Positions 8,257 to 62,300 of a stretch of DNA of 64,000 nucleotides are shown here, in pieces (position 1 is the first letter of the stretch; the number at the start of each line of letters is the position of its first letter). Source of the DNA: Chara braunii. Taxonomy: Eukaryota > Plantae > Charophyceae. The translations under genes were made by a program, and so were the position numbers. The DNA is taken from NCBI GenBank assembly GCA_003427395.1, contig BFEA01000041.1, forward strand, positions 2,162,015 through 2,226,014. The letters are read 5' to 3'. A model generated the notes under the pieces. The model worked only from the letters and a program-made list of their open reading frames with translations. It did not search any database and was not told the DNA's origin.

Positions 8257-8520
8257 AACAAAAGCTCCAATCTATTCATGGGGAGCAGCACGTGCTGGGA
8301 ACCGGGCCCAGCATCCCTTTTGAACATGCATTGACGCACCGGAGCCATTATCTGACTTCGGCTGAAGAAAATCTAAGAGCAGTTTTGAACCAAGTATGAA
8401 TGAGCCACTTCAAAGAAGTTAATGAAGAGAGAGGAGCCTACACATACACAGCCCAAGGCCGCATTTCTCCTACTGAATCACACCAACTTCCCCTGTTCCT
8501 GGAATCTCTTCACCCTACTG
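8218..8520 (-). mobile_element. 5'-truncated L1/Tx1-type LINE 3' end
   Basis: Poly(A) (poly-T on +) next to the conserved 3' tail motif at 8264-8317; 5' boundary approximate. Confidence 0.7.
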
Positions 8521-8681
8521 TTGGGATCACGCGGCCGAAATCGGCTGTGCCCAGCCGTGTTAGCCCACAGCCGTCCCAAAAGGAGCTAGCCTGACAGGGC
8601 ATTCTGGCTTCGATCTGTGCAGCAGCAGCATATGAATTTGGCATGTTTCATGTTGGGCTAGCTCCTTCATGTGAAATAAGA

Positions 8682-8702
8682 GTGGTCCTTCGGGACATCC
8701 GT

Positions 8703-8734
<32 letters not shown>

Positions 8735-8749
8735 GGCCCCTGCGCAAGG
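8682..8749 (+). pseudogene. U6: 3'-truncated U6 snRNA copy
   Basis: GTGGTCCTTCGGGACATCCGTTAAAATTGGAACGATACAGAGAAGATTAGCATGGCCCCTGCGCAAGG, near-identical to plant U6 nt 1-68; identity then stops abruptly; no USE/TATA seen upstream. Confidence 0.93.
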
Positions 8750-10894: not shown

Positions 10895-11143
10895 TTGCCG
10901 CTTTCTTTCTTTCTTTCCGTCTCATTAATGAAACAAGTGAGATGCGTTGCGTAAAGTCTCTGAGGATCCCAAACAGCTCGGCGGTCGCTGGCTAGGGCGA
11001 GCGGCCGTACTTTTTTGTGGTTTCCTGCTGATTGAACATTGCTTATACAATTTTCACTGGTTTGGAGCAAGCACTTACGGGCGTGGTCCTATATAAACCT
11101 ACTAGTTTATCGAGAACATTATCGAATGATGATTCGTGGCGGA

Positions 11144-11210
11144 GAGCCGTATGATGGGAAACTATCACGTGCGGCTCGGAGGGCGGGAAAACACAACTCC
11201 CGACCCCTAT
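11144..11210 (+). ncRNA. NUMT: group II intron domains V-VI (3' end of a cox1 intron at position ~835)
   Basis: GAGCCGTATGATGGGAAACTATCACGTGCGGCTC (domain V), domain VI hairpin, terminal CCCCTAT abutting a cox1 exon; upstream LVYREHYRMMI may be a decayed maturase/HNH end. Confidence 0.92.
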
Positions 11211-22829: not shown

Positions 22830-24200
22830 TTTTTTTTTTCCTTTTTAAGCAGCATGTGCTGCGAACCGGGCCCAGCGTCCCAAATGAAAGCTTACATAAA
22901 ATTTTGAAAATTGAGATACCGAGGTCATTACCTGGCTTTGGCTCAGAAAAAATTGGAGTTGCTTGGGAAATGACTATGACAAACGTCAGAAATAAGTTGA
23001 ATTCAGAAAACGACTCAGAACCCCCCCCCCCCGTCCATCCTCTTTACCTCACTCCGGTAAGACTTACTGTACCAGAGCCACCATCTCCGCTGCTGCTATA
23101 CCCTATTCCCATCCTACCAGGCTACCAGCTAGCCCCCTCACTAGTAGGACGCGTGATCTCCCACCATCTCCTTCTCCCACTCACCTCGTTCTCTTTTTGA
23201 GATACCTAAGAACACTAGTAGTAATTCGAGAGGCCTGGGAATAGACCGCGAAGGTCCTACAAATGCTTTGAAAACCTTGAAATCCCTAACAAACCATTCC
23301 AAAGTTCTCCAAAACTGTTTTACTTCCTGTCGAGCTCTTCCAGGCCTCACACCCCCACATCCTGCTGGGTTACAGGGCAACACAACTCACCCCAGCTCCG
23401 ACCAGCGTCGTCCCGGTAGCAACCCTTGATTGTCCCGTGGAATGCCTACCCCAAAGCATCCCCAGATCTCTCTACCAGCCTTCACGCTCCTGCATCAACA
23501 GGTTACAGGGCAACACCCCAACACCAACCAACGTCGTTCTGGCATCGAACAACTGCAAATCACTGAGCATAACAGACTTCGAAGCCACCTAGGACGAGTT
23601 GATACGAATCCCAAAGTCCTAAAGACATTCTAAGGACCACCAAACGACCAACATTTTTTTAACTTTCCTCATAAGATAGAGTAAAATTGAAAAAAAACGA
23701 AAAAACTAGGAAAAATATGAGAGCGAGGGGTCGAATGAAAGCCTACTTTCCTAAACTCCCCCCCTCAACAGAAGGAACGTCAGTCCAGGCTTTCAGTCCT
23801 CGTACTAGAACTCACTTGATTTCATACCCCTTTCTGCTAGGGTAACAGGACACCACAACCGTCCCCAGTACCGACCAACCTAGTTCTGACGAACAGGAAT
23901 TGCCTTCCTCCCTCGACAGTTCCCTTAGCGGCAAGCCCCTAAACAAGTTACAGGGTCAATACCCCGATGCCGGCTACGTCGGACGGTGCCTTCCACCCTC
24001 AGCATAACTCCACAGGCCTCAAGCTCCCCCTAGGTCACAGAGCAAAAGCACCAGCACCGGCCTGTGTCGTCCCAACATCGTCCTTCTAACCCACTTACCT
24101 TAACAAACAACCTTCCTCTGTTGAGAGCCCCCTTACTACGTTCCAGCCTACAGTTTTAGCTTCCCCTCCTTTCACTCATTTTTTGAGATAATAGGGTCAC
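22830..24200 (-). mobile_element. Rearranged LINE 3'-end derivative
   Basis: Poly-T, partial tail motif 22848-22881, homology to 17020-17870, internally repeated GTTACAGGG(C/T)AA..CCCC block also present at 57360-58330. Confidence 0.6.
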
Positions 24201-28953: not shown

Positions 28954-29905
28954 TTTTTTTTTTTTTTTTTTTTGGGTAAACTTCGCTGTGTCGTGGACCG
29001 TGCTAATGGAGGTGATAGGAGCATCCCCCATTAGCAGGCCAAGTTTTGGATGGCTCCATCTATTGGTGGGGAGCAGCACCTGCTGGAAAGTGGGTCCAGC
29101 GTCCCTTTATACACTTTATAAAGGTTTGGAACAATGCCAATGACAGCTGCCCTTCGGGGAGTTCAGCTTGTTATTGCCGGGAGGTAACCCCGGTATCAAT
29201 CAGTTTTCTACTAGTCTCATCTGCAGATCCATGCAGTCAGTGGCACTTTTGGCAGTATTTATGAAGACCTCGTGTCTAACACCCTCCCGTCCGTTTGTGT
29301 GTCCTCACTCATTCAAATCGTCATGCCTGATAACCCCTCGTCCGTTTGGATCTCTTCAGCATTGCTTTCGTTGTCTCAACTGTTCGGTGTCACCTGATTC
29401 CTTACCCACACACCCTTTTCCTGCTATCCCCTTACTTTCTGTTCGGTGACACCTGATTCCTTACCTGCACACCCTTTTCCCGCTATCCCCTTACTTTCTG
29501 TCCACTCTTTTCAGTCTTGTTCAGTCTGGCACTATAGGCCCTACATCTCCGACAGTCTTGTTGTCTAACCCCGTGCTTGTCTGATGTTTGGTCGTTGTTG
29601 CTCCGTGCTCAGATCATCTCATTTGACTGGACGGGGTTTGACTCACCAGGGAAGAGGGGCTGGCAGGGGCCGAGACCGGGAGGGGGACAGAAAGGAGGAG
29701 GGGGGAGGGGGGGGGCGGGGGGTCTAGGATCGGGGGCAAGGGGCGGGGTGGGTGATGGGGGAAACTAGAATAAAGTTTTGTTCTTGGTAGGGGACATGAA
29801 AGTGGGGTCTAGGGAGCCTTTCCCATGTCGATTCCTCCGCCACCCACCGATTCCAGACTAAGTTTTCGTGGTCATCCAATGTGGCCAGCTTCCTGTTTTG
29901 GTCTA
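28954..29905 (-). mobile_element. 5'-truncated LINE insertion
   Basis: Exact 16-bp TSD TCCTCTTCCTACTCCT (28938-28953, 29906-29921), poly(A), tail motif 29053-29105; 5' end encodes DDHENLVWNRWVAEESTWERLPRP, loosely like the ORF2 C-termini of the other LINEs. Confidence 0.85.
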
Positions 29906-30199: not shown

Positions 30200-30649
30200 C
30201 CACATGACGGCCTACCGGGAAGAGAGCAACTCATGAGCCATTGCTGTACACTCTGCCTGAAGGGCAGACATAAGAGTTATTGATGTACATTCTGGCTGAA
30301 GGGAAGGGTAGGGTTTAGCTGCCAAAGGGTTTAGGGGCTAAGGGAATTAAAGGGATGAAGACGAATGCAACTAGCCTCACCACAACTCAACATGCAGATA
30401 AATAGAATCTGATGGGGAAGTAGCCCGTATTGTCCTGCATAATTGAGGCAGCCCACATTTAGGCTGAAAAGGCACTGACCTATTATACTCCGATCAAACT
30501 CGTAAGTATTTTATGCAACATGTAAAAGGGGACGTTGGGCCTGCTTCCTATAAGGTGTAGCTCCCCACCCATAGATGGAGCTGCCCCGGGAGAGTTTGAT
30601 GTGTCTGCTCCTATCAGGAACTCAAGCTGTTTCAGCGGTTCTTTCTCAA

Positions 30650-30682
<33 letters not shown>
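30200..30682 (+). mobile_element. LINE 3' end
   Basis: Degenerate tail motif 30529-30581, poly(A) 30651-30682; 5' boundary approximate. Confidence 0.65.
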
Positions 30683-30684
<2 letters not shown>

Positions 30685-31530: not shown

Positions 31531-32811
31531 CGGTCGTATGAGCAAGCCCTCTGTGACGACGTCTAAGCACCGCCAGCTTGTTGTCAGACCTCTTAGCAGA
31601 AGAAGACAAAAAGAAAAGAGAAACATAAAAAAAAAAAAGAAGAAAAAGAAAGAAAAGAGAAACGTCGCCTCGTCATCCGAATCTCGAAGAACAGAAAAGA
31701 CAAAAAACAAACAAACACCATTTCGGTCTTGATATCAGTCCACAACATTCTTTCAAGTGGCTGTGTAGGTATGCCCTGGATGAGGCTGTTTGAGCGAATC
31801 AAGGAAAAGGATGTGCCAGACTGACATGGGAATCTACGAAAAAGGAGAAGACAAGGAAAAAAAAAAAAAAAGCAAAGTGAATCTACACTAAGATTATGGA
31901 CAGGTCTGTTAGAGAACTGTGTAGGCAGAGAACTGGTCAGCCTCATCTCCCAAGAGTTAACCGGCTGTCTAGGGATGATGACCATCCTCTCCTTCTGCCC
32001 ATCCCGCTCCTTTGACCACAAAATGACAGCGGTTGGTCTTCCTCTCAAACACCCTTTCTGTAGAGGACCCGGTTTAAATTGAACACCGTCCTCACTTAGG
32101 AGCAACATTCATGGTTTTAGTTTGAAAATGGCAAAATGCATTTTAGTCATTATTTCATGAATGTGGCTCCAAAGCGAGGGAAATCGTGAATGTATATAAC
32201 CTGACTTTAGGGTCGGGTGAGGATGTGTTGTATTCGAGGGATGTGTAAAGTGGATTTGAAACTGAAATAGTGACTGCGCCCTAGTCACCCCTTTTTTTTT
32301 AACTGAAAACTGGGACCAGTGTCCCATATTGCTTTTGAAATTCTGACATTCCGAGACTCGAACGTTAAACCACCAATACCTCTCCCCTCTTGAATATCAA
32401 TTCTGCGATGGGTAATGAACTTGGGCAGGACCCGGTCCGCCTGGATGTATCTGGTCTCAGGCTTAGTCCTGATACATCCAGGGGGTATCCATTTTGACGA
32501 AATGGTAGTTATCATTGAAAGGTCGCTGACGTTCATCTCCACTCTTCGGATTCTGCATCACAGAATCAATCCTGCTAACCATTGTAACTGTAAATGATCA
32601 GTGTTGATTGATATCACAGTACAGAATGTGAATTGACTCTGTTTTTTGTTCGGACTGTTCACGTATAGTCTCTGAGGATCCTACACACGCCAAGCGGGGT
32701 CGGGCCGCCGTTGATAAATTGAATCAGTGGCCTGTTTTGGCTTTTCTTCCCGACCCTGGCCGATATATGGGAAAGATATTGGTGACTTGGAAGCACAATT
32801 CAGCCACCAGC

Positions 32812-33186: not shown

Positions 33187-34457
33187 ACGGGTTTGTTTAA
33201 CCATCTGGCAATCACCAGTTCGTGGTCTGACGTGATGGCTGCCGCCGAACTTTTACCCTTCGCCCAAGTCCTGTGAAACCAACCAGCCTTCTTGCAGAGA
33301 CCTGGGGGGTTCTACGCCAGTCTGCTCTGATGGCCCGCCGCCTTATGCCAGGCCCCAAGCGCTGCCACCTTTCTGGTTCTGCATCAGCTGTCCTTCCAAC
33401 CCCCAAGCGCTGCCACCTTTCTCCCTTTTTGTTTTGTGGGGATGTATGGCAAGTAGAGCTCTCCTTTTTTCCCTTTTTTTTTGATGTCTTTTTTCCGCTT
33501 TCTTTCCTCGGCTCTCAGCCGCAGGCTCGGCTTGTGCTAACCTAGGGCCGTGACCCACTAGGGGGGGTTTAGTTTATGTTTCGTGTTTTTTCCAACGTGG
33601 TCACACTACAGTAGGGCCGTGAGATTTTCAGATCGGATGGCAAGGAGTCATCCATGTACACTCAAAACCAGAACAAAACCTCGAGAAGTGGGACATGGCC
33701 CCTGGTTGGATATATGGCCAGTTCTCAGCCCCACGCTCCGCTGGTGCTAACCTGGTTACATATATGGCCAGCCCCCGGGCCAAGTCCCACTTGGCTGAAT
33801 TCTTCATTTCTGGTCGTTGATCTTCAGAATCAACGGTCAGAACCAATCAAGAATTCGGGTACTAAGTGGGACTTGGGAGAAAGCACGAACCTCGCCTAGT
33901 TGAAGGCCAGGATCACGTTTCTTTTTTTTCTTCTTTTTTTTAAAATTTAACTGGATCACCTTTTTTTTCACCATGAACACACCGTGATGATACCGTGGAC
34001 ATACTAGCAGTTGGGTGTTGACTGCGTTGACTTGCCTCTTCTGCTCGGGAGAGGATGTCCAGGCCCGTCCTTTTTTTTTTTTTTTTTTTTTNTTTGCCGA
34101 CCTTTTTTTTTTNTGCGGGAAACCGGGTCCGGCGTCCCTTACATTTATGCCATGGTCTGTTGGGCTGGGCAACACACTCCCGGCCAAACCCATCCCTACC
34201 ACAGCAAAAAGACCTGTCTTGGGTGGTTAGTCAAAACAAAAAGAAAACCAAAACAAGGAAAAGCAGCCTAGCTAAATGAGCAATTGCTCAGACTCAGAGC
34301 ACTAAGTAAACCCCAGCTATGTCAAATCAACCCTCCTAAAATCTTTTATTAATTTTTTGGGAAAGCCAGCCGCTTGATGATAGCTCGGTGCGGAGCGCGG
34401 TCCCTCCCACTATATCTAAGAAGAAAAGGGGACGGAAAAAGAAAATCCAACCACCAG

Positions 34458-35114: not shown

Positions 35115-38100
35115 TTTTTTTTTTTTTTTTTTTTTTTTGGGAAGAAATTTGGACTTCGAATATCAATGAAAGGAGGCTGGGAATGCCTCACGAACAACCC
35201 GGGGCGTGGTCCCACTAGCAAAGAGGATCAGATCCGATGGCCGAATCTGGACGTAATTGTGGAGAGGTGCAGGAAATCGAGATTGAACTGCTTTTCTGCA
35301 CCTCTGCGTAAAACACATCCAGATGCAGGAGCTTGATCCTATCCTCTTTGCTAGTGGGACCTCGGCCCCGGAGTTTCTGGGGCGCATACCCAGCTTAGGC
35401 ATATGCTGGAAACCGGGTCCAGCATCCTATTCCTTTCTGCGTGTCCAATTCATCTTCCAAACAGTCAAAATCCAAGACGGTCTAAATACGGGGACACAAC
35501 CATGGGCAGAACGCCAACTTCCCTTCTTGCACAGACACCAAATGACTGTCCCACGCCCATGTAGGAGAAAACCACAGAGGGCCCTTCCTTTGCCAATCTG
35601 CAATATTAATAAGCCTGATTTGAATTAGGATAAGCCTTTTCTTTTTTCTTTTTTTCTTTTTCTGACCGCCTGATGGAAAAAACTGAACCTAGCCTCCCCC
35701 TTATGAGTCTCTTTCATTCTGCCTAATCCTATGTCCTATCCTCCCCCCTCCAAACCACTCAAGATCCACCAGAGCTAATGAAGAGGGAGGAAAGGGATCA
35801 GCAAACAATTCAGGTGCTCTTAAGAAAAACGCTGGTTGAGTGTCAAGCCAATTATGAAAGTTGATCTGGTAATCCCGTTTGATCCTCCCTTGCTCCTCTT
35901 CCTTCCCTGGCCATATTATTTCCCCCAATTTCTCCTTTGCTGCATCCCCTAGCCATTCCAGTAAACTTTAATATTCCTTGTTTTATGTCTGTCTCTTATA
36001 CACATCTAGATGTGTATAAGAGACAGGTGCTCCTCTTCCTTCCCTGGCCATATTATTTCCCCCAATTTCTCCTTTGCTGCATCCCCTAGCCATTCCAGTA
36101 AACTTTAATATTCCTTGTTTTATGTCTTCTCTCTGTTTAAATTCCTTGAGCTTTGTTCTCATCTTCTCCCATTGGCTTCTCAGTTCTGTTTGGACAAAGT
36201 TTTGTATTATTTCTGTCAACTCTTCACTTTCAATCTTCGCCTCTTCTATTTCGTTAATACAACGTTTGTGCCATAGAGCCCACAATATCGCTTTCCTCCC
36301 AAGATGAAAGAGGCTCTTTTGGAACACAGATAATTCTATTAGTTGAGGGTTCCAGTATCCTAATAATATTGCCCTCCATTCCCAGGGCCAATACAAGCCT
36401 GTAAATCTCTGCCACACACAGTCCCTTCGGCGCCATAACAAGACAGTGACCGGACATTGTAAAAATATGTGTTCAATTGTTTCCCTGATTTTTCTTTTAG
36501 GAAAGGTCCGTGCACAAGAGTTGCACCACGACAATGCCACTTCCTTCTGTTCGAATGTGGAGTGATCTATTAACCAGTCATTCGTTGATAGACATCTGTG
36601 CACTATCTGCCATTGTAAGGATGCAAACTTGGCAGGCCTTTCTCTAAGTCCCTGACACCACCCGATTGGTTTAAGCTCGTCTTCGTAGATGTGCAGGTGT
36701 CTTTGCCATCTGTTTTGAACCATTTCTGGGATGTTAACTTTGGGGCGCATTAGTCTATACGTTGCTTTAACTGATATGGACTGCAGCCTCATAGGTTTGC
36801 ATCTCCTATTTCAGCACCATAACCAGTCCGGAGGATCCAAGGGGAGGTCCGGGATAGGGCACTGAGGAAGGTACACTAACCATTCTTTGGTCGTTGTGGC
36901 ATACCATACTCTCGCTCTATATATTTACTCAAAGGAGACAAAAGTCACCCTGTCCTAATCCTTTTTAGCAATACTATTATCCCTGTGAATTTCGAATAGG
37001 TTGACAAAGGCACCATCCTCATGTACATCAAATATTTGCCCTATTGTCTTAAAGTTATCCTGACGATTCACCCCCACCCAATCCGCTACCCGAAAAACAG
37101 AGCCCTTTTTCAAGGAAACTATCGAGGATAGGGGTACGGCTGAAAGGATTTCATCCAACTTGTCTAAAAGTTTATGTGCGCACTTAATCTCTTTCCTAAG
37201 TTTTTTCCACGGTTTTCTAATTTTTCTGCTCAGTATCCCATCGATCATTGATTCTAATTACTCAATTCTTCACCCATGTGGACCATGGAGAATCTGAACT
37301 AATGAATACCCTCCCGTTCTGGTCCGTGATCCACCGATTGCCAAACAAGGGTTGTCTTAGGATTTCCTTGAACCTTGTCGGTATTGGCTTGTTAGGTAAG
37401 GGTCATTCCCGCCAGTATCTTAGCTGGTTCGACCAGAAATCGTCGAGATTTAGGTCTTTCCTCGCTTCCCCTCTTGCCCCTAATTCCATCGACTGTATAT
37501 GGGCTCAAGGGATGGACCAAAAACTATCTTTCACCCAAGTCAGAGGGTGAACGTCCTTAATCGTCTCGGGTGCCAATCTTCGGATCTGTTCTAACGCCCG
37601 ATCTTGGCATGACAGATCCGTGACCAGAATTAAACGTTTCAATACTTGTAATGCTAAGGTCTTACATTGGATTTTTCGGCTAGTAAGTCTCAGACCTCCT
37701 TTGTCTTTGGGTTGAATTAATGTCTGCCATGCCACTCTTGGGATCACGTGTGATGATTCGTGATCCCCTCGCCACAGAAAAGTTGTCACTTGTCTCTGTA
37801 ACTCCTTTGTAGCATTTTTACCGAGTGACCACAGTATAGCTTTGTACCAAATTGAGGCTATAACCACATTGCTGATTATTAATACCCTACCAAATATCGA
37901 TGTGTGTTTATTCCTACACAACTCCACCTTTTCTAATGCAGGGCCTGGAGACGAAATCCATAAATCGTTTGAGTTAGGTTCCCCTAGAGAAGTGAGTATT
38001 ACCCCTAGCATCCAAATAGGAGCCTCCAGGGGCAACCACTTGATCCTAGGGAGTTCACGTGGTCTATCCCCTTGAGAATGTATGCACCATCCTTGCGTTT

Positions 38101-41100
38101 TGTCACCCCAATTTACTAGCATATCCGAGAGGGTCGAAAATTTGTTCTTTAAAGCCTTGACTTCCTCCATATTGGTCATAGAAGTCTCCATCCTGATAGT
38201 TAAATCATCCGTGAACATCGAATAGATAGGAATTGCTTCCTTTGGAATGTTAGTGATCCGAAGGCGTTGAAGATTGCGGTTTGCTCTCAGGTTGACCCCT
38301 AGAGCCTCCATAATGATAACAAATAGGAATGGAGTCACCGGATCACCTTGTCTGACTGACCTTTGAAGAGGAATCTCGGGAGACAGTAGACCATTAACCT
38401 GAAATCTCGTCGTGGCATTAAGGTGAAGTAATTGCACCCACCTTCTTATTGCTGGCCCAAATTGTAGCTTAGCTAGGCAAGCGTCCAGGAGACGCCAATC
38501 GACATGATTGTATGCTTTTTCAAAATCTATGAAGATGAGAGCAATATTTTTTGTTTATTTTGCCTAGATAGCTTGATCATCTCATTGACTAGCAACACAT
38601 TGTCCTGTATGTTTCTCCCATGAATAAAACCAGTTTGGGAGGGATGAATAATGTCTGTCATTATTGGAATAAACCTATTAGCAATGACTTTTGTTAACAT
38701 TTTATAAATCACTGTCAACAAAGTAATTGACCTATAATTCCTTATGTTGTTTTTTTCTCCCTTTTTATATAGTAACGTTAGGACCCATTGACCAACAATT
38801 TCCCCCATAGTACCGGCTATCTGAATTTGATTATAGTATTTCATCAGATCTTCTGACATTGAGTCCCACATGACATCCTAAAATTCCTTCAGGAGACCAT
38901 CCATCCTTGGGGTTTTATCTTCCTCCATCTGCAGGAGAGCCGTCCAGATTTCATCCTTCGTAATTGACTCTTCCATTTTCTCTTTTTGCTCCGGGGATAA
39001 TTTTTATGTTAGTGGTTGAAAACTGCTCCGGGATTCACTGTAGTTGTGTAAAGCTTCTTAAAGAAGTCATAGGCTAGCTTTAGACTGTTTGCCGATGAGA
39101 CATACTCCAGATGAGGTGTCATAGCTGGATCTATTAAAGCTTCAATGTTTGTCTTTCTAACTCTGGTCTGTGCTAATGAAAAGAAAGAGGAGTCCATTTG
39201 CCCTTCTGATTGATATTTTGATAATTTGCTCCTAACAAGGTAGCCTTTCCAACGTTCTTGTGCGATGGTAAGTAATTATCTCCTGGGATCCTGAATATCC
39301 TCCAAATGAGGAAGTGATGTGAGATTTTCTTGTTGTTCATAAGACAATATTTTCTTCTGAATTTTCATTTCTGATCATGCTTTTGTTTAGCGAGTAATTT
39401 CAGGAATATATTAATTTTTTTGACTATGAAATAAAATTCATTATTAAACCATAATGTACATGACTCGCGTTTGTCCTTCGTGGTGTGGCAAAACTCTCAT
39501 ACCTCTTTTATATAATTTCTAAAGTCTGTCCTTTTCAAGAGGGATGAATTAAGCTTATAGAAACTTTTTCCACGGTTCAGCTTTTTCCTAAAGAACAGTA
39601 GAATGACACACATTTTGTGATCAGCTCCCGGCTATGGGCATAGTGGGAAAATGTTAGCTCCTACTATTGCATGATCCACATCTTCTGACATAAGTATCAA
39701 GTCTATTCTAGATCTGGACTGGTGGGGAAAACCCGGATTTCTGATGCATGTAAAAATACGTTATTGGAAAAAACCTTTTTATACGTATCATATAAATTTT
39801 CGGCTTCACATAACTGTTGAATGATCATTCCGTCGTCCTCTATATAAGTAGGACATGGCGAGGGGATCTTCTATCTGTCTAATCATCTATCTAGGGCTGC
39901 ATTAAAATCTCATGCCATTATGATGGGGATCCCATTTGGGGTATGATTGCGAAGTTCTTGAGAAAATTGTTTCCTTTCCTGAAATCATTAGGAGCATACA
40001 CATTTAGAATGCACACTATTTTCACTTCCAACATTAATAATGCAGAGATCCATCTTTCGTTTTCTTGATCCGCCTCCCAATGAATGACATCTGTCATGGA
40101 ATCTGACGGTATCTAGATGACAACCCCTACTGAATGATTGCGCGTCGCATATGCTTGGTACTTTTGATGCGGCCTGACCAGATTATGAGCCCTGTTGTGA
40201 ACGGGGGAATTCATTAGGTGGGTTTCCTGAATACATATCACATCTGGCCACGATCTCCCTTCTACCTCTTTTAGTTGTTTAGTGACTGTTCTTCGTTTAA
40301 TTGCATCTGCAGTAGCCAGCCCATTAATATTCAGTGACCTTAGGTCTAGATCTGCTGATTGGGTGGCCCGTAACCAGGACGAATTTTTCCATCAAAAGCT
40401 TAAAGTGTCTCCATCCTTTCTAGAGTGAGCCATTAATTATGAAGGTTACAATCTCACCCACCCCACTCTATTTAATTCTGTAGGGGTGGTGAGGAACCCA
40501 TATCGTAGAATACAACAAAGGAAGGAGGAGATTTTCGCCACTGACCATACGGCATTTGTTTTTATCTTGAGTTGTTGTGATTCAAGCAAAGCCGCATGAG
40601 AGAATCACTTAAGCCCTGATTCTTTGTTCTCCTCGAATCTCACGAAGATTTCCCTTTTGGCCATCTTGGCTTGTTTCCCACTCATTGTAAGAGTTGCTTG
40701 GGGTCTAGGATCAAAGTGTTTTGACATAAAATCATGCATATCCCTTTTAAAAGTTTTATCCCCTGTGCTTTGGTACTCAACGTGGGTCATCCATCCTCTT
40801 AATGTTACCACCCCGTATTGATCCTTGCCTACCGGGGAGAGACTTATTTCTCATTTGACCCCTTTCTTTTTTACTGGAATCACCAGGTTACCCTTGAGGG
40901 GTTGTATCCCAGTTAAATGACTATTTTCTAATATATGTTTCAATTTCTTTTTCTTACCCATATCGTCTTTCCACGTCGATATTGACGGTCGACTCTTGTC
41001 CTCCTCCAAATCTTCCTTTCGAAGGTTGGAAGACAAACTTGGGGACATTACCCTATCTCCTTCTTTCGTCTTCTTTCCTCTTTTTGCATCCCCATCCTTT

Positions 41101-43800: not shown

Positions 43801-44217
43801 CTGAGACACTCCCCACGAATAGACTGGAGCAATTGTCCCCCCCCCCCCGAAAAAAAACATGATCTGCAGGGTGTTCTTTCCATCTTCTGGTAGCCAGATC
43901 AACAAACGTTTTTGAATTTTCTTGAGTTGGATGACCCTCTCATGTCTGCGACTTTTTCCTTTGGGCCATTTGTGTTTAAATAGTGACCGCTTAGCGGGAA
44001 CGCCCTTCAGAGGCAGCCTTCCGATGACTGGGCTTGACACCCGTTGGGTGGATTTGAGAGGGCACGAAACTTGGGGCTCTGCGGTTCGGGTGGAGCAGGA
44101 CAGCCCCAGTGACCTATTTTACATGAATGATCGATATACTACCGTCTTGGGCACTTGGGCCCTGCCAAAGTAAAAAGAAAAGAAGAAGCTTAGGCCGAGA
44201 AAGGTTTGCCCTCGTGG

Positions 44218-46171
44218 TTTTTTTCTTTTTTTTTTAATACTAAATGAGCAACATTTATAAAGTTGAGCCGGGAACCGGGCCCGATGTCCCTCACAAAGTT
44301 CACCGCAACTCTAAGGCTGAGCATGGCTCTCCGGCCAAGCAAAGCCCACACCACAACTGTGGCAAGATTGTACTCCTTATTCTCTTTTGAATGCAAACCC
44401 TCCGCTAACAATATCCCTTAAACCAAGTGTAACCTTATCATGAAGAAATTCTATAGACTGTACTATGAACACTGATTTGAGCACTAATTTGGACACTGTA
44501 GAAGGACAGAGCAAAAAGGGGAAGGGAGCAAAATAGGGGACGTGATCTCTGATTACTTTCACAAGTTCTGTACAACCAATTATACTACAAAAGAAAAAAC
44601 CCTGAGAAGCACAGATGGGGTTGTTGCTGTGGCAAACATTCAGTTGTGAACAGTCCTGAAAACTCAGTCCAACATGTGTTAAAAGGCTGCATTGATTTCC
44701 GCGAGTATCTTTCCGTTGAACTGGATACTCCCAGTCAGCCAAGCTGGTTTGCTTGATGAAAAAATTGATTTCAGCTCGAACAATCGGTGGTGTTACCTCT
44801 CCCCTCTCCTAGTCGCTAAGTTCCATAAGTTCCAAAGAGTCCACAATATGTCTCCTCTCAGCGTTTCTTCTGCATATGCATGTCGTCAGGAGGGAGACAT
44901 TTCTCTCGTCGCTGTTTCGAGTAGTAAAAAACAGTCCTCCATCTTGAATTGTTACCAGGAACCGGGACATTCATTTGTCATCACCAATCCCAAAAAGACC
45001 TAGAGATATCACAGTGCAAAACAAAGTGTTGCAGATCCTCCATTCGAGTTTCTGTGCATATCACACATTCCCGTCTCGCTTTGGTTGTTCGTTTAGAGCA
45101 CAACCTGATGCATCATTAGCCTGAGGAAACTGGCATGCTTAACTACAACCAAGTCCATAATTTTTTTCCAAAACATATACAATGCTTCGGTCAGTCTTGT
45201 CAGCGAGTCTTTAAACCAACCTGTTGCCAACCACTTGCGGGCTACAAGCCAATTAACATCGAATTGTGGTGTAGAAACCTATTGCCAGCCACTTACGAGC
45301 TGATTGAAAACCTTATTATACGTTGACACCATTGTTATATGGCCTATGGCACCAATTAACATCGGCTTGCTGTACCAGATGAAGGTGGTATTGTTGGTGC
45401 CATAGGCCAAAAAACAATGGTGCCAACGTATGATAAGGTTTCCAATCAGCCTGTGTGATGTCCCAGATGCCTGTCACTGTGCCAATGCCCCGACTCATCC
45501 GAACGTTCCTGAAGGCACCAGGTCCATAACATTGCAGAGGTTGTCCATCAAGTGAATAGATATACGGGTTATAAAACAATGGATGTGTGAGAATCCTCTC
45601 TGCAATTATAGGTGGTGGTTGGAGTGTCGGTGGGAGTTTCTTCCATGCCTTGAGTATTCCCCCCCATATGTCGAGCGACATTTGTTTCTTAAGATATGGC
45701 ATGAGAAGAGTTGTCAGCCAAACATGTGTAGATTTTTCCCACCTTCAGATTGATAATAAGGCCGATTCTGCCAACTGCTTCTAAGCAGAAATAGAGCCCT
45801 CCAAAATGGCCCAAACGATTCATCTTGCTAACAAAACTGTCTACCTTTCAGGGTCCAGCACAACCAGACCCCCTTTACATTTGGGTTGGGTAACAACTTG
45901 CCAAGCTAGTTTTGACAAGTAATTGTCTTCATTCGTTTCCTCTTTCCATAAGTAGTGTGTGGCAAGATGACGCACTGTCTGCAGTGAAGAGGGATTCATT
46001 TGATAAATGGATCTATGGTACCACAATGTTGAGAAGGGTGTCGTTACACACTCCTCGGGGCGTCCTTGGGCTCCGAGGATAAATCCTCGGAAAAGTCTAG
46101 GGTTTTTGTCGTCCTCGTTAGACTCATCCTTGGAGCGTTGGATTTAGGACTCATCCTCGGAGAAATGCCGG

Positions 46172-46207
<36 letters not shown>

Positions 46208-47388
46208 GTGCTGGTTTTCAGCCAATAGGGTGCCGCCACGATCAAAATTCTAGGTTGTAACGTCTCTCTACGTGCATGCCCTCTTCTCTCCGTGAAACAC
46301 GGATCCTCGGGCTCCAAAGGAGCTCGCGAGGTCCCTTGGAGTCGAGTACAATTTGGCTGGGAAATCCTTGGAGCCCAAGGATTTGTCCTCGGAGTGTTTT
46401 CACATTTTCATTTCTGATTTCATCTCTGAGGACAGGTGAAACGAAGACGAAATCCTTGGAATCACGTCCTCGAGGAGTGTCTAACGATACCCGAACAGGC
46501 ATTGTTAATGACAACAGAACGACCAAACAGACCAACTCTTTTGTGGGTCGTCCATGGCCGAAAGGAGGCTTGAAGAGCCGTCAAAGAGATGTTAGAATCT
46601 AATCTCAATTGGGGATCGAAGGAAACCTTGTATCCCAAGAGTCTTTCTTGTTCAGAGGGAATCACAACACAAAGTCCCTAATGATCAGGAGATTGAGCTC
46701 CTGGTGAGGCTGGTGGTATAAGGACAGAGGATTTTGACCACTTAACCGCCGCTTGTGAGATGTGATAAAAAAGGTCAATCCTGTCTCTCAATGTCTCAAA
46801 AGCTCGATCATCGATTGGGATAAAAGCAACAGAATCATCTGCAAAGGATTCAGATTTCAACCTATCCCCTGATGGCAACATAAAGCCTGGAATCCCAGGG
46901 TTGCTTTTAATCAGAACATGCATTACTTCAACATACTGTATATACAAGTAAGGAGCCACATGGCAACCTTGTCTAGTAACTGACCGTGAGAGGGAGACGG
47001 GTGGAGAAAGAGTGCCATTGATGTAAAGGCGTGAGGTGGCACCTTTAAGCAAGGCTTGAACTGCATGTTTAAACTTGGGCCCAAATCCAAATGCAGTCAT
47101 TGTAGCTTGAAGAAATTCCCATCCAACACGGTTGTACGCTTTCTCTGAGTCCAAAAGAATGATTGCCAGTTGATCACCCGTTGAATTCACCCATTCCATG
47201 AACCGTTCAACAGTCATAACATGGAACAGTAATTGCCTGCCTTGTAGAAACCCCATTTGCGAGGGATGGATTATCGTAGGTAAGACATGTTGCAATCGGG
47301 TTGCCAAGATTTTCGAAAAATCTTGTATACAACAGGCATCAATGTTATCGGTCTATAGTTGCAAACATCAGTACGATCCCCCTTCTTG
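44218..47388 (-). mobile_element. 5'-truncated decayed L1-clade LINE (more divergent family)
   Basis: [67 protein letters not shown]; partial tail motif 44266-44290 and poly(A). Confidence 0.92.
46036..46492. mobile_element. PIF/Harbinger-like MITE inserted in LINE ORF2
   Basis: 25-bp TIR GGGTGTCGTTACACACTCCTCGGGG / CCTCGAGGAGTGTCTAACGATACCC, 3-bp TSD GAA, many CCTCGG/CCTTGG internal repeats; removal rejoins the LINE VINNA..STLWY region. Confidence 0.88.
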
Positions 47389-47443
47389 AAAACACATTGT
47401 TTTTGTTATGCCCCCCTGTCTTTTGTTTTTGTTATGGCCCAGT

Positions 47444-48722: not shown

Positions 48723-49048
48723 TCATGTTTCAAATGGGACGCTGGGCCCAGTTCCCAGCACAATACCTTTCTCGGTCAAGTGTAGTATCTGTTCTGATCA
48801 GTTTAATATCTGATCCGTGGTCCATCGGGCCACATGATATTAAATTAATTTTTCTGGGCCACGGAGGGGTCAGACGGGTAGGCTTGCTTACTCGACCCCT
48901 CCAGCGTCGCCTCTGTATTGCACTGCTGCAGAGCGCGGCGCAGCCCTCCCCCCTCTAAGGGGAAAAAAAAAAAAAAAGGGTTCCCAGCACGTGCGGCTCC
49001 CCACGAATAGATTGGAGCAGTGTCCCAAGAAACAAAAAGAAAAAACAA
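48723..49048 (+). mobile_element. Minimal LINE-tail insertion (~97 bp) split by a U2 retrocopy
   Basis: 12-bp TSD AAGCCAAGGATT (48711-48722, 49049-49060); tail motif halves 48736-48761 and 48980-49018; A-rich tail. Confidence 0.8.
48763..48977 (+). pseudogene. U2: Near-full-length U2 snRNA retrocopy
   Basis: ATACCTTTCTCGG-(~14-nt deletion)-TCAAGTGTAGTATCTGTTCTGATCAGTTTAATATCTGAT, Sm site AATTTTT, stem-loop IV TTGCAC; poly(A); 11-bp TSD GTTCCCAGCAC. Confidence 0.93.
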
Positions 49049-49538: not shown

Positions 49539-49903
49539 GAGTTGGGGAATTGGAGAGGAGTGAGACAGAATGGCGCCTTCGACTCCTTGGGAAGTCAGCC
49601 AAGTGGCGCGAAATGTTGTCGGCATGATAGGTACGTTCTCTACTTGCGTCATTTGCTCGAATGTTGCCATCACGATACTTTCACAATGCTGAACTCGATT
49701 TGCAAAGAAAAAGACGAAAAAACACTAGACAAAGGGCACTCATCTCTCCCCGTTTCCCAGCAGCTGAGGTGACGCTCCGTCGTTCCCCACCAATAGATGG
49801 AGCCCCTCCGTAGGTGTTACCGGTGTCTGCTCCTAGCAGCACCACTTGCACTACAGGAAGGGTTAAAAAACAAAAAACAAAAAATCTTTGTTTGTTCTCC
49901 TTT

Positions 49904-52999: not shown

Positions 53000-53793
53000 T
53001 ATTGAGGCAGGCGGTGACCTCGGTGCTTCCCCATTGGCTGCACATGTTCACCTGTTTTTGTCTAAAGGGGACCGACCTTAGGTGGCCTGTAACAGGCTTG
53101 TGACAAACAGTGTCTCAAAATAGCACAGTTATTTTGGGTGAGAACCTCTTGGGTGCTCTGGCTGGCTAGGAGAGACCGAATCTTTTCTCAGAATCTGAGA
53201 AGGCCACCACCCTGGGCTCTATCTTCGCAGAATACAAGCATGCTATCAGACTAGACATCATGTCTGAGTGGGTCAAAATCAAGAAGCAAACAGGCTCGAC
53301 AGAATCTCCCAAGATTCGCTCCCAATCCAAGTGGGCTTCTCTACACTCTTGGGCCTACTTCGATGACAGGGGCAGGCTCAGGTACTCGGAGCTCTTGTGG
53401 GACCACCACCCACTCACAGACCTAGGTATTATGGATTCAGAAGGCAGCCCATCAGGCTGAGAAGGTCTGAGGTCCCTTCTGAGCTCGTAAGGGCACTGAG
53501 CAGCAGAACGCATAAGGCTATCAGAAAGCTAAAAAGGGAAGCCGGACCTGATTTTCTTCCTTCCGTCATATGCAGAGATGCTAGAATTACTAGAAGTATT
53601 TTCTTTTTTTCTTTCGGAGGGGACGCTGGACCTGGTTTCCAGCCAGTTTTTCTATGGCTTCTTCTGAGGACAATGGAGCTGCTTTCCAGTCGGATATCCA
53701 AGATAGGATGCTGGACCTGTATTTCAGCAATCGGGATTGAATTGTGAGGTCCCCGGCCTCTGTTCTTGTCCTTTTAATACCAACAAAAGTAGG

Positions 53794-53836
<43 letters not shown>
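53000..53836 (+). mobile_element. 5'-truncated LINE 3' end
   Basis: SWVLWLARRDRIF ORF2 C-terminal motif, first half of the tail motif twice (53620, 53705), poly(A) 53794-53836; 5' boundary approximate. Confidence 0.72.
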
Positions 53837-53838
<2 letters not shown>

Positions 53839-56884: not shown

Positions 56885-57359
56885 TAGGGGTTTCACCGCA
56901 CGAGTCACCAAATCTGCAAAATGAGGAAGTATCTACTGCTAAAAGGTGGAAAGTTGTTTATTTTTATTTTTTATCTTTTTGGTAGTCAAACGAATAATGG
57001 TCTCTTCCAATTGACAATCATCACAACATACAATGTGAGTGTGAACCCGGGAGCAAGCCTCCACAAAGTAGTCGCCAACTCTCTCTCTCTCTCTCTCTCT
57101 TTTTTTTTTTTTTTTNTTTTTTTTTTNTTTTNTTTTTTTAAAGGGGCCCACTGCCCAGTGCCCAAGGCTGATATTACCAATAAGAGGAATGAGGCCGGGG
57201 TCCTCACAGTCTGCCCGGAGAAACTGAACCGAGCTTGCTGAGAATCAGGCTCAGCGTCCCTCATGTGGTGACTATGATGAAGATGATGATGATGATGATC
57301 CTGATGATGATGATGATACTACTGATAATGATGCTGATGGGGATAATAAATTGTATTGT

Positions 57360-58330
57360 CGTAAGCTATGCTATATCGACAAATCTGGTCTCCTAATCCT
57401 AGAACAACTTCTAGCTTTCCCTGTACCGGGACATTGTAAAACAGAGACAATACTAACCTAACCAATGCCACCCATAGCTGATCTCTCCTCGCCACCTAGC
57501 AGCCCCCTCCGGTTCGCCAGTGGATTGCCTTCCTCCCTCGGCAACCCCCAGATCTCTCTACAAGGTCTCACGCTCCTGCCTTTGCAGGTTACAGGGCAAC
57601 GCCCCAGCTCCGGCCAGCGTCGTTCTGGCGTCGGCAAAACAGGGGCACAGAAAAGAACAACTCTGCAGATATCGGTCCGGGTTCGACCATCCCTGAAATC
57701 CTATATCCCGGATGTGGGAGAAAACTCGATGCTGCCCAAAGATTCCAGAACACCAGAAAGCTTAACCTAACATTGATGAGATAATGATACTACTAATGAT
57801 GATGATATTGATGAAGATGATTATGTTTTTCTTGAGAATTCTAAAGAAATTGACTGCACCACCTTTATTAGATCTAAAAGATTGTGAATACTATGCTTTA
57901 TCAGCTATTCCGGCTTCCTAATCCGAGAGCAACTCCTAGCCCTCCCTGTACTGGGACACTACTACTCAAAGACAGTACCAACCAAAACAACATCAACCAT
58001 AGCTGACCTCTTCTCACCCCCGAGACTATCCCCGGCCCTAGAGGGTGTCAAGGCGCCCCCCCCAATTCGCCACTGGATTGCCTTCCTCCCTCGGCAAACC
58101 CCAGATCTCTCTACAAGGCCCCACGCTCCTGCCGAGGCACGTTACAGGGTAACACCCCAGCTCCGTTCAGCATCGTTCTGGCATCGGCAAGTTGAGAACA
58201 GAGAGAGACCAACCCTATTGATGTCAGTCCAGGTGCAACCATCTCTGAGGTCGAAGATCCTAATAAAAAAGAAGACCCGATGCTGCTCTAGCTCTCAGAA
58301 CCCCGGAAAGCTGAAAATAACATGAGCGGT
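57360..58330. repeat. Two diverged ~0.45-kb units separated by (GAT)n, related to 23340-24000
   Basis: Shared GGATTGCCTTCCTCCCTCGGCAA..CCCAGATCTCTCTACAAGG..GTTACAGGG..CGTTCTGGC. Confidence 0.75.
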
Positions 58331-59341
58331 CCAAGAAGCTTCCAATAGTCACCATGCAGAAAAAAATTCCCCCTACCCACCACCGCTGTCCCACGCTGCC
58401 ACCGCCGAGGAGATTCACCTCGGCCCCAACCTGGAACAGATCCCCTCCCTCCCCCCTCCGCCAAGGCAGCCAATTCCCACATAGAGGGTGCCTTCGCCCT
58501 CCCCTTTGTCCCTATCTGCCCCCGCCGGGGTTGAAGGCAACCAACTCTCCCACCCCGGCCCCAGACAAGGACGAACCACAAATCTGCCCCACCCCCGACA
58601 GAGCAGCCACCTCCCACCTTGCAGCGCCCCTGTAGAGTAAGGCTCCCCAACGCCCCCCCCACCCTTTCCCAAAAAATCGACACCGTGACCGCAGAAACCC
58701 TAACCAGACTAAAGCATTCCGATCAGATGAAGCAGTCAATTATCGTCGATGAGGATCTCATGACCCCCTAATAAAGGATTTGCTTGAAGATGATATTTCT
58801 AACGATGCTATAATTGATGAGAATAGTGATACGATGATAATTCTACAGATGATGGTAATAACGATGAAGGTATTAATGACTTTTGGAAGAGTGGGTGACC
58901 AAAAGCGGTACCCTAAGACTAATTTTTTTTAAAGATGGTATTAGTACTGATGATGATAGTGATGGCGAGGATAATACTTCAAATAATAGTGGTAACGATG
59001 ATGGTATTGATAGCGTTTGAATGGATGGGTAACTAGGAACAATACCCTAAAGATGGTATTCAATTTGGCGAACAAACTCACGTACAGATGGTATCGGGGA
59101 TGACCCACTCTCTCACATCTATTTTTAGACACTGATGAGTGGAAGCTTATGTCTTGAAGTGGGCACTATCCAGGCTTGGCAAGGGAAGAGTCAAAAGTAC
59201 TGGTGGCCCCTCCCATTCCAAGGCCCCTATCACATTCTTGGGGAGCCGCATGTGCTGGGAATGGGCCCCAGCATTCCTTTTACAAAACTCACACCGCCGT
59301 ATAGTGAACCCCACACGTGCTGGGAATCAAACCGAGAATCC

Positions 59342-59346
<5 letters not shown>

Positions 59347-59380
<34 letters not shown>

Positions 59381-62300
59381 GAGCATCCTTGCCTAGTAGT
59401 AGATCCTTATGCGGCCGCTCCATCTATTGGTGGGAAGCATCACCTGCTGGAAAACGGGTCCAGCGTCCCTTATACAGAATAGATCAGAATAGTTCAGGAC
59501 AATGTCTGGGAAAGTCACTGAGAAAGTCTGAGAAGGTCCGCCTCTTCGTCCGAATTGCCGGATGCCAGAAAAAACTGAGAATTCTAGCAGCCGTTTTGCT
59601 GTCTTCTGGTGTGGCACGGTGGGCCGGAAAGAGTCACTGGGGGACACCAGTGGATCCTCCTTCCGTCTACCGGCCTATCTCCTGATTAGTCTTAAACCAA
59701 AAGTTATGTTAAGGAGAGGGCGTGGGGAGGGAAGGGGTCTGGGAAATCCATGGGGCTACGAATTCCCCTCGGCGGCGGCCATCCGCGGACAAGTCCGCGG
59801 CCGCGGCCTAGGCCGCGACCCCGCGGACGTGTTCGCGGTCCGCGGCCTTGAAAAAAAAAAAAAAAAAAAAAAAGAATTCAAAAAATTCTGAAAAACAAAT
59901 ATGTTATGCAGAAAATATACTGAACAACTTTTGCCTTGTGGTCATATCCAAAAACAATACTGAATTTAAAATAAAAAATCACATACGTTTCATTTTTTTT
60001 TTTGGAAAAAAATAAATAAACAGCTTTTGCCTCAGGAAAATTAGTTTTTGAATTTTTAAAATTCAAAGACGAAGTCAAAAAATAAAATAAAAAATTGCGC
60101 ATTTTAGATCTCGAAAAGATCTACAACCCCATATTTTTTGTTTTTTTTTTTGATAAATTTTCAAGGTCACAAAAAATTCCTGAAAGTCGCGGCCGCACCC
60201 AACCGCGGCCGGAGCCGCGGCGGCCGTGATCACGTCCGCCCTCGGAGCTTGACCCCGTGGACACGTCCGCGGGTGTTTCATAGCCGTGGGGGGCCGCAGA
60301 GGGAACGAGGGGTCCATCTGGGTCCAGTCCTTGAAAACTAATCTATAGTCCTTTATCAATTCCAGATGATCCTGTTGTCCGCCTATTCTATCCCCGCTCC
60401 ATGTGACTTTTGTTACCCATCCTTCCCTTTCCCCTCCCAACCAGTCTGTACAGGAGGCCGTAATCACTCTCCTGATGTCTGTGGTCTGTGTAAAGAGGTC
60501 CAGCTGGGACTTTGTTACGCACCACCTCCTCATGAGTGCCAGCTGTATTTGTTGTTTGATTTGTTCAGTAATTTCCTTTGCTTCTATCCTCACTTTTTCC
60601 AGAGCCAAAACGCATCTTTGTCCCCACAGAGCCCACATCACCGCTCTCCTTCCTAAACCTAACATGTTCTCAACAAAGTCTGAGCTTTCCCCTGCCATCG
60701 GCCAGTGTCCAAGCAGAATGGCTTGCCATGACCATGTTCAGGGAACCTCCGCTACTGTCTTCCGCCAAATGCAGTCCCACCATCTCCACGTGAATTGAGC
60801 TATTGGGCATTGCATGAACATGTGCTCAATAGTCTCCGCCCTCTTATGGGGGGGGAACATGCTCAGGCATCGCTGGCATCAGGGCAGTGCCAAACCCCGT
60901 TGCTCCAGGTTGGTACGGTCTATTAACCACTCATATGTGGGTAGACAACGGTGCACTATCTGCCACTGCAGGGAGGAGATTTTCGCAGGTTTTGACTTCT
61001 GGTCCTTGAACCAGCGGATCGGCTTCAGGAGGGAGCGGTCCACATTGAACTGTTTGGCCCAGCGATCTATGCCCACATCTCGTAGATATCGTTTTGGCCT
61101 ATACATTTTATACGTGGATTTGACTGACAACCTATGGAGTGTTATGCGATCTGTTGTGCCCTCCCCCCTTCTCTGGGGGAGCACCCAGGTCCATTCCCCT
61201 GGATCCAAGGCCAGTTCCTGTATAGCCCATTGGGGTTGAACGACCACTCTCTCCCCTCTCTTCCAAGACCCGGATCCGATACACCAAAGCGTTCTCTAGC
61301 CATTCAGAAGGGGCTCTGCTTCCATTGAGGGTTCCCCTGCGTGTGATGGTGTAGTATTCCACCAGGACCATGCGTGGGTCTAGTACTATAGGATTTGACC
61401 AACTCTTAGTGGAACCCCCTTGGTTGCTACCCAGTCTCCCTCCTTTAGGGAGGACCCTCGTTTGAGGATTTGATACCATGCTATCGGGACAGCCTCGATA
61501 AGATCATCCAGGTGTTGTTCTATGTGGTGACAATGGTGCAGGCTTTGTCGTAGTTGATCCGGTGTTTTCCAATTGCGTCTCTCCTGGTCCCAAAGATTCC
61601 CTACTCTGAGTACTCCCCACTTGACCCAATTCTTCCACGGAAGGGCAGAGCTTAACCTGGTACAGCCCGTTCGGTCTGTCAGCCGTCGGTTGCCAAACAA
61701 GGGTTGGCGATAGATTTCCTCCCAGCGGTCGGGGGGGGGTTGTCGGGGAGCGGGAGCCGCCGCCACACTGCCAACAAGGATGGCCAAAAGTTGTCCCTTG
61801 GTTGGTCTTCTCCTTCCTGTTCAGGATGTTCAAGCTGCTCACCATTTTGCGTGGGAATGTCCAAAAACGGTCCTCCAACCACGTTAACGGATGTATCACT
61901 CGAGAGGCTGTCGGGGCCATGCGGGCCAGGTGCTCCAAAGCCAAAACACACCACGGACTTTGGAGAGAGAAGATCATTTTTTTCACCCATTTTAAGCGCA
62001 GTGCTTGGATTTGTGTATGAGGGTCTATGATCCCTAGGCCCCCTCGGCTTTTGGGCTGGATTGAGTCCCATGCTACCCTGCTGATGGCCTTACTGTTTTT
62101 GCTATCACCTCTCCAAAGGAAGGCTGCTGCCTTTCTTTTGAGTCTCTTTAATGCCCCCTTGCTTAGTGGCCAGAGCACCGATTTGTACCACAGTGTTGCG
62201 GAGGCGACGTTGTTAATGACCAGTGCTCGACCATAGAGGGAGATGTGCTTATTTTTCCAGGTAAGGAGTTTTTGCAGGGCGGGGGTACTCACCCACTCAT

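What the first reader, a model, noticed from the sequence alone, without database searches (positions are those of the whole stretch)
8264..59469. Conserved tandem double-pseudoknot RNA motif at the 3' end of divergent L1/Tx1 LINEs
Seen: ~15 full or partial copies, mostly in element-sense orientation just upstream of poly(A): 8264-8317, 13135-13188, 17054-17107, 22848-22881, 29053-29105, 34114-34138, 35404-35427, 44266-44290, 59240-59277, 59417-59469 (all minus); 30529-30581, 43809-43830, 48736-49018, 49783-49803, 53620-53643, 53705-53728 (plus). Consensus GGG-AC-GCTGGR-CCC-NNTT-YCCAGC-A-SGTG-CT-GCTCC-C-CACS-AATAGAT(T)-GGAGC, while flanking 3' UTRs are largely unrelated. It can fold as PK1 (GGG/CCC plus GCTGGR/YCCAGC) followed by PK2 (SGTG/CACS plus GCTCC/GGAGC with an A-rich loop 3). 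Compensatory changes: GCTGGG/CCCAGC vs GCTGGA/TCCAGC; CGTG/CACG vs GGTG/CACC; AGG/CCT for GGG/CCC at 53705; CGGG/CCCG at 44266. Established: mammalian L1 recognises poly(A) only, stringent LINEs use simple 3' stem-loops, and stacked H-type pseudoknots are typical of plant RNA virus 3' UTRs (tobamovirus upstream pseudoknot domain). Inference: a structured cis-element shared across LINE families for RT recognition, RNA stability/translation or 3' processing; I know of no description of it.
Basis: partly seen in the sequence, partly recalled or inferred. Interest (0 to 1): 0.88.

Follow-up and report, generated by a model that had tools for sequence, protein, structure and literature searches.

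The report
Pseudoknot tail shared by stonewort LINEs
Distantly related jumping genes (LINE retrotransposons) of the stonewort alga Chara end in the same small folded RNA knots, kept by compensating mutations, which points to an undescribed RNA signal that these elements need and that may bind a host protein.

Summary
Real. The window is most likely Chara braunii. About 18 places carry the motif, in element sense just before poly(A); shuffles give none. With 10 more C. braunii loci I aligned 45 copies of PK1 and 32 of PK2. PK1's 6-bp stem and both PK2 stems covary; PK1's 3-bp stem is weakly supported. The two knots are separable modules: PK1 alone, PK1+PK2, PK1+PK2+long hairpin with a conserved 7-nt loop, PK1+another pseudoknot, or another module+PK2. 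PK1 and/or PK2 follow ORF2s of at least three lineages only 33-37% identical, while the motif stays about 87% identical. No Rfam match, no paper found, absent from four non-Chara LINE loci. Function is untested. Best guess (0.45): a platform for a host RNA factor acting on 3'-end formation, stability or translation, like the tobamovirus upstream pseudoknot domain; rival (0.3): ORF2p template docking, as in vertebrate R2, which already uses a 3' pseudoknot. The scan noted this motif before in many other windows of this genome.

The parts
8264..8317 (-). PK1+PK2, CGTG class, poly(A) 8 nt later (8218-8255)
13135..13188 (-). PK1+PK2, GGTG class, of a 2.08-kb insertion with 14-bp TSD
13052..13134 (-). 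tail hairpin with conserved 7-nt loop
17054..17107 (-). PK1+PK2, CGTG class, short tail
22847..22881 (-). PK1 and half of PK2, then A tract (3'-truncated)
29053..29105 (-). PK1+PK2, GGTG class; insertion of about 950 bp with 16-bp TSD
28974..29052 (-). tail hairpin with 7-nt loop, then poly(A)
30529..30581 (+). PK1 (decayed)+PK2
30582..30650 (+). tail hairpin, poly(A) 30651-30682
32302..32325 (-).
34114..34138 (-). PK1 directly before poly(A); N at 34113
35404..35428 (-). PK1 of a near full-length LINE relic
35173..35202 (-). alternative pseudoknot module (PK-B) of the same element, 34 nt before poly(A)
36166..40337 (-). broken L1/Tx1-type ORF2 (endonuclease to C-terminus), about 29% to nearest Chara ORF2
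43809..43830 (+). 3' half of PK2
44266..44290 (-). PK1-only tail of a lineage-A element
45439..47393 (-). broken ORF2 with RVT_1 domain (lineage A), interrupted by an insertion
48736..48761 (+). PK1 of a copy split by a U2 retrocopy; first target duplication 48751-48761
48763..48948 (+). U2 snRNA retrocopy with poly(A), no motif of its own
48980..49018 (+). second target duplication and PK2 of the split copy
49749..49864 (+). partial PK1, PK2 with an insertion, tail hairpin
53620..53643 (+). PK1, upstream tandem copy
53705..53760 (+). PK1 (AGG/CCT variant) followed by PK-B; poly(A) 53794-53837
57191..57260 (-).
59234..59328 (-). two decayed partial copies
59377..59469 (-). PK1+PK2 and a tail cut at the 7-nt loop; poly(A) 59346-59376
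60699..62794 (-). 5'-truncated ORF2 relic of that element, 25-30% to other Chara ORF2s

Best explanation
A modular, selected RNA structure at the 3' end of Chara L1/Tx1-type LINE transcripts. Shown: two small H-type pseudoknot modules (PK1: 3+6 bp; PK2: 4+5 bp with a fixed A-rich loop 3) and an optional long hairpin, kept across ORF2 lineages and copied with the element into very many genomic places. Inferred: because the motif stays nearly unchanged while ORF2 diverges to about one third identity, and its distance to poly(A) is free, its main partner is a conserved host RNA factor rather than each element's own ORF2p; the knots, the UGUA word just upstream and the AAUAGA loop form a platform that helps the LINE mRNA be 3'-processed, protected or translated, as the tobamovirus upstream pseudoknot domain does for viral RNA. 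Lineages then keep or swap the modules because any LINE that carries them makes more usable RNA.
For: PK1: 39 distinct sequences, 93.7% of cells paired, 6 of 9 pairs with two-sided changes, 0/500 shuffles, slid controls at most 57%; six different perfect stem-2 types; G-U departures outnumber A-C 20 to 7, pointing to the sense RNA. PK2: 28 distinct sequences, C-G/G-C/A-T at stem-1 pair 1, G-C to C-G at pair 2, U-A to C-G in stem 2; loop 1 free, loop 3 nearly fixed. Full PK1+PK2 follows ORF2 of lineage B (L011) and lineage C (L010, L001), PK1 alone lineage A; these ORF2s are 33-37% identical in separate well-supported clades, motif identity about 87%. Spacing from PK1 start to poly(A) runs from 25 to 290 nt. 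U2 and U6 retrocopies with poly(A) but no motif show poly(A)-only mobilisation. UGUA within 14 nt upstream in 16/45 copies vs 17/540 control bins. Motif-bearing reads are abundant in oligo-dT RNA, about 80% motif-sense if the library is dUTP-type, 99% running on into other flanks. UPD function: PMC4683447.
Against: No binding or functional data. Copies are related, so the shuffle tests overstate significance. Invariance could also come from recent tail swapping between lineages. Lineage C elements in L003/L004 have neither PK1 nor PK2. No Rfam UPD match. Sense bias in RNA may come from oligo-dT capture of genomic A tracts. PK1 stem 1 has one two-sided change only, and plain folding gives an alternative nested structure with z near 0.
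Confidence: 0.45

Rival explanations
1. The tail is a template-selection signal bound by ORF2p itself, positioning the poly(A) end for target-primed reverse transcription, like the pseudoknot-hinge-stem-loop of vertebrate R2 or the stem-loops of stringent LINEs.
For: Terminal position in nearly all elements; pseudoknot(s) followed by a stem-loop resembles the R2 layout; every ORF2-linked Chara 3' end I could read ends in some conserved structured module; a general stem-recognition surface is conserved among L2 proteins (PMC4176376); tandem duplications at the motif fit RT stalling at a bound structure.
Against: Stringent recognition is cognate-specific (PMC4176376), yet here one motif serves ORF2s of 33-37% identity and one ORF2 clade uses different modules; spacing to poly(A) is variable; motif-free U2/U6 retrocopies exist.
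Confidence: 0.3
2. The motif is specifically a polyadenylation or termination signal: UGUA upstream, AAUAGA displayed in loop 3 as a near-upstream element.
For: UGUA enrichment; AAUAGA lies about 20-35 nt before poly(A) in short-tail copies; loop 3 is kept even where both stems changed (L002).
Against: In long-tail copies it is 75-95 nt from poly(A); PK1-only elements lack it; an A-rich loop 3 is a generic minor-groove strand of H-type knots (established knowledge).
Confidence: 0.12
3. The motif has no present function; it spread by tail swapping and hitch-hiking, and the covariation reflects a few ancestral events.
For: Modules occur in mixed combinations across clades; copies are related.
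Against: Different compensations recur in different lineages and in the tail hairpin, whose sequences are only 47% identical yet fold with median z of -3.3; conservation ends sharply at the motif edges.
Confidence: 0.06
4. A new small self-cleaving ribozyme or an exonuclease-resistant RNA.
For: Compact knots with conserved loop bases; A/U-rich leader upstream; ribozymes are known in non-LTR elements.
Against: No Rfam ribozyme or xrRNA match; modules are separable; tandem, not nested, topology; no pile-up of read ends, though fragmented libraries show this poorly.
Confidence: 0.07

Closest known systems
Vertebrate A-clade R2 3' UTR pseudoknot-hinge-stem-loop (PMC11601368)
   Same: Pseudoknot followed by a stem-loop at the 3' end of a non-LTR retrotransposon, conserved in structure across divergent UTRs.
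   Different: R2 has a restriction-like endonuclease and zinc fingers that bind the knot; one knot, GGAAAAG hinge, fixed terminal position. Here APE-type L1/Tx1 elements, poly(A) tails, up to two tandem knots, exchangeable modules, no such hinge.
Monocot L1 lineage LINE1-1_ZM / ZmSINE2-3 and Chlamydomonas L1-1_CR conserved 3' ends (PMC3472496)
   Same: Green-lineage L1-clade elements with a short conserved, covarying 3' structure before poly(A).
   Different: A single hairpin in one lineage; here pseudoknots shared by several lineages at about one third ORF2 identity. Sequences not compared directly.
Stringent LINE tails of ZfL2-1/ZfL2-2 (PMC4176376)
   Same: Cis-acting 3' stem-loop; the Chara tail hairpin also has a free stem and a conserved loop.
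   Different: L2 clade, cognate-specific loops, no pseudoknot.
Tobamovirus upstream pseudoknot domain (PMC4683447)
   Same: Tandem small H-type pseudoknots in a 3' UTR; PK2's short stem 1 and A-rich loop 3 recall UPD PK3 (resemblance from memory, untested).
   Different: Viral; followed by an aminoacylated tRNA-like structure rather than poly(A); no Rfam match of the Chara motif.

Membership tests
L1/Tx1-type LINE (host element) | ORF2 with APE endonuclease, RT and C-terminal zinc knuckle | tested here: met
   RVT_1 in window; Exo_endo_phos, RVT_1, zf-RVT on related Chara ORF2s; tblastn map
L1/Tx1-type LINE (host element) | poly(A) tail, target-site duplication, 5' truncation | tested here: met
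   TSDs of 14-16 bp for several copies; poly(A) after nearly all
Stringent-type LINE 3' tail | conserved, covarying structure at the 3' end | tested here: met
Stringent-type LINE 3' tail | tail specific to the cognate ORF2 family; tail-less RNAs not mobilised | tested here: not met
   same motif behind ORF2s 33-37% identical; motif-free U2 retrocopy with TSD, though the mobilising family is unknown
Stringent-type LINE 3' tail | direct binding by ORF2p, needed for retrotransposition | not testable with these tools
   needs biochemistry
Vertebrate R2 3' element | pseudoknot then stem-loop | tested here: met
   long-tail class only
Vertebrate R2 3' element | GGAAAAG hinge and R2 protein (restriction-like endonuclease, N-terminal zinc fingers) | tested here: not met
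   no such hinge in alignments; ORF2 is APE-type
Tobamovirus UPD | tandem H-type pseudoknots in a 3' UTR | tested here: met
   by covariation; not probed
Tobamovirus UPD | match to Rfam viral pseudoknot models; downstream tRNA-like structure | tested here: not met
   poly(A) or a hairpin follows
Tobamovirus UPD | binds eEF1A, enhances translation | not testable with these tools
   needs biochemistry
Small self-cleaving ribozymes (HDV-like, twister, pistol, hammerhead, hatchet) | Rfam match or catalytic core in the right topology | tested here: not met
   tandem separable knots
xrRNA | discrete 5' ends at the structure; Rfam match | tested here: inconclusive
   no Rfam match; no end pile-up in fragmented reads
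ENE / triple-helix stability elements of plant transposons | U-rich internal loop that binds poly(A) | tested here: not met
   no U-rich internal loop in the aligned modules; family definition from my own knowledge
Repbase/Dfam Chara entries | an already annotated tail | not testable with these tools
   no such library available

The most novel reading that the evidence does not exclude
Chara LINEs of unrelated ORF2 lineages share and swap a kit of virus-like RNA modules (tandem pseudoknots plus a hairpin whose 7-nt loop mimics a tRNA anticodon loop) that recruits the host translation or tRNA-handling machinery to the LINE mRNA 3' end: a plant-virus-style 3' enhancer in a cellular retrotransposon, present on the order of 100,000 times in the genome and in many transcripts.
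Probability: 0.15. Interest if true: 0.85.

Novelty: new variant of a known kind. Interest (0 to 1): 0.63.

Why it matters
L1-clade elements are thought to recognise mainly poly(A); whether their ancestor used a structured 3' signal is an open question (PMC3472496). Chara, a close algal relative of land plants, shows a compact, strongly covarying, modular pseudoknot tail across several L1/Tx1 lineages, which gives a small, directly testable RNA (25-55 nt) for that question. Its constancy across divergent ORF2s suggests a host partner, and its abundance in the genome and in poly(A) RNA means it may also affect host transcripts. It is also a new candidate Rfam family in a eukaryote.

Tried and rejected
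Rfam at gathering and E-value thresholds: nothing on the motif. Exact pattern scans: JGI metagenomes gave three BFBZ01 contigs only, a record series that also holds a Chara-type LINE; viral contigs none. LINE loci of Riccia (L005), Sphagnum (L009) and two unnamed ENA assemblies (L013, L014) have no PK1 by covariance model and, for L005, L009, L013, no PK2 by HMM; four loci cannot show absence outside Chara. Paper searches found no description. The charavirus paper says nothing on 3' structure, so a link to Chara viruses is untested. A homologue search with a frog L1 and with the window's 391-aa ORF gave nothing useful; the locus for P0030 was too long. Pistol resemblance (stem plus AAUAG strand) rejected: no P2/P3 or catalytic motif. 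DNA-level element rejected: G-U over A-C bias and covariation. Assembly artefact rejected: copies differ, have TSDs, and are seen in independent reads. A nested fold pairing the 5' GGG with PK2's CCC cannot apply to PK1-only elements, which keep GGG and CCY with no downstream partner. Pairing of the tail loop with loop 3 of PK2 showed no covariation by eye. The tree is the quick one; the careful search did not finish.
Full report
Source. The only Pfam RT hit among 20 long ORFs is 46678-47307(-). Its best relatives are all Chara braunii gene models, the top one 63% identical, and identical motif copies lie in C. braunii contigs. U6 and U2 copies are plant-type. The window is therefore most likely C. 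braunii; I did not match it to the assembly directly.

Observation. All listed copies are present. Shuffled windows give nothing comparable. Six copies are intact, one is split by a U2 retrocopy with an 11-bp target duplication, one has an insertion, and two were missed (32302-32325, 57237-57260). None spans an assembly gap. Upstream flanks are unrelated apart from one pair. Laying public data on 28000-31200 shows the motif as a sharp island: summed contig depth about 1.1 million at 29091 against about 10 in single-copy flanks, which suggests on the order of 100,000 copies although the tool warns that this is no copy number; 99% of RNA reads run on into other sequence.

Structure. PK1 (stem 1 GGG/CCC, loop 1 two bases, stem 2 six pairs, loop 3 four bases): 45 copies align without gaps; 93.7% of cells pair, five of six stem-2 pairs and one of three stem-1 pairs have two-sided changes, no shuffle of 500 reaches the score and slid controls fall to 27-57%. 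G-U departures exceed A-C 20 to 7. Stem 1 is the weakest part. PK2 (4+5 pairs): 28 distinct sequences, compensations at stem-1 pairs 1 and 2 and stem-2 pair 3, free loop 1, nearly fixed loop 3. Loop lengths fit H-type geometry (established knowledge). Relatedness inflates these statistics, but the changes fall in different lineages. Plain folding is unremarkable (z near 0), as expected for pseudoknots.

Modules. Reading 3' ends behind mapped ORF2s gives: lineage A, PK1 only (window 44266, L001 13644); lineage B, PK1+PK2 (L011) or a different upstream hairpin/knot (module D) plus a PK2 with both stems changed and loop 3 intact (L002, five copies); lineage C, PK1+PK2 (L010, L001 47618) or module D plus another pseudoknot, PK-B (L003, L004); two further window elements, only 25-30% like the others, carry PK1+PK2+tail (59417) and PK1+PK-B (35404). 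Lineages A, B and C are separate clades with 99-100% support in a quick tree, their union only 85%; ORF2 identity between them is 33-37%, motif identity about 87%. GGTG-class copies often continue into a 60-85-nt tail: 21 tails, median identity 47%, median folding z -3.3, with a 7-base loop of consensus CUCNUAY closed by variable pairs (one of the 21 was mis-anchored). That loop fits the tRNA anticodon-loop pattern (Y32, U33, U36, A37), a low-information resemblance; it is also similar to PK2's middle strand and may stem from a duplication. UGUA is enriched just upstream of PK1.

Distribution. Only Chara so far: no hit in four non-Chara LINE loci, viral contigs or other metagenomes. Eukaryotic genomes could not be scanned, so age is unknown.

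Mechanism. Shown: selected RNA structure, terminal position, modularity, presence in poly(A) RNA. Inferred: the partner. Cognate ORF2p recognition (PMC4176376; R2, PMC11601368) predicts co-divergence and fixed spacing; here the motif is constant across ORF2 lineages, spacing varies from 25 to 290 nt and motif-free snRNA retrocopies exist. I therefore favour a host factor acting on processing, stability or translation (0.45), by analogy with the tobamovirus UPD (PMC4683447), over ORF2p docking (0.3); the two are not exclusive. Pure poly(A) signal 0.12, ribozyme or xrRNA 0.07, no function 0.06.

Novelty. Structured LINE tails are a known kind, including a pseudoknot in R2 and a hairpin in one monocot L1 lineage (PMC3472496). 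Tandem, exchangeable pseudoknot modules shared across L1/Tx1 lineages were not found in Rfam or in the papers searched; Repbase and subscription papers could not be checked. Other first-stage notes of this scan describe the same motif in other windows of this genome; they are not independent support. Verdict: real, new variant of a known kind, interest 0.63.

Noticed in passing
L002 (C. braunii BFEA01000301), e.g. 5764-5998(-), 2188, 15260, 38335; L011 2168-2708(-): Lineage-B L1/Tx1-type elements insert at one site near the 5' end of 18S rRNA: ten places show the same 14-15-base 18S word, mostly right after poly(A), and a short insertion has it as target duplication on both sides; 18S and 5.8S sequence lies in these loci. 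From memory this is near the R7/R8 site; I found no report of an 18S-specific Tx1-type family.
   Followed up: partly
L003 17256-17305, L004 14761-14813, L002 15182, 28339, 38254; window 35173-35202, 53731-53760, 57191-57218: Two further 3' modules: a hairpin with a GAU..GC loop and compensated stem (module D) and a pseudoknot built on a GAGG/CCUC hairpin (PK-B); few copies, covariation not counted.
   Followed up: partly
window 35989-36026; also L003 36697, L004 15772, L007 7199: Nextera mate-pair junction adapter left in the assembly, with a duplicated stretch of about 100 bp in the window: an assembly artefact.
   Followed up: yes
window 30880-30935: Another short high-copy repeat, also seen in RNA reads with strand bias; not identified.
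   Followed up: no
window 48331-48433, 8685-8749, 62737-63914, 52058-52248: U6 and U2 copies: a U6 retrocopy with poly(A), a 5' U6 fragment, a 393-bp tandem array containing U6 variants, a second U2-like stretch.
   Followed up: no
window 11142-11210: Group II intron domain V-VI fragment, probably organelle-derived.
   Followed up: no
L001 16823-44716: In the long intron of a pectinesterase gene model, motif-bearing elements lie mostly antisense to the gene (about 9 vs 3); LTR-poor intronic DNA is rich in them.
   Followed up: partly
window 44195-44215 (-): A U2 5'-end-like fragment follows the poly(A) of the lineage-A element by 10 bases; not seen after the lineage-A element in L001.
   Followed up: no
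RNA reads laid at window 29053-29109: A few flank types dominate the motif-bearing reads (hundreds of reads, 0.94-0.99 agreement), so some highly expressed transcripts carry the motif.
   Followed up: no
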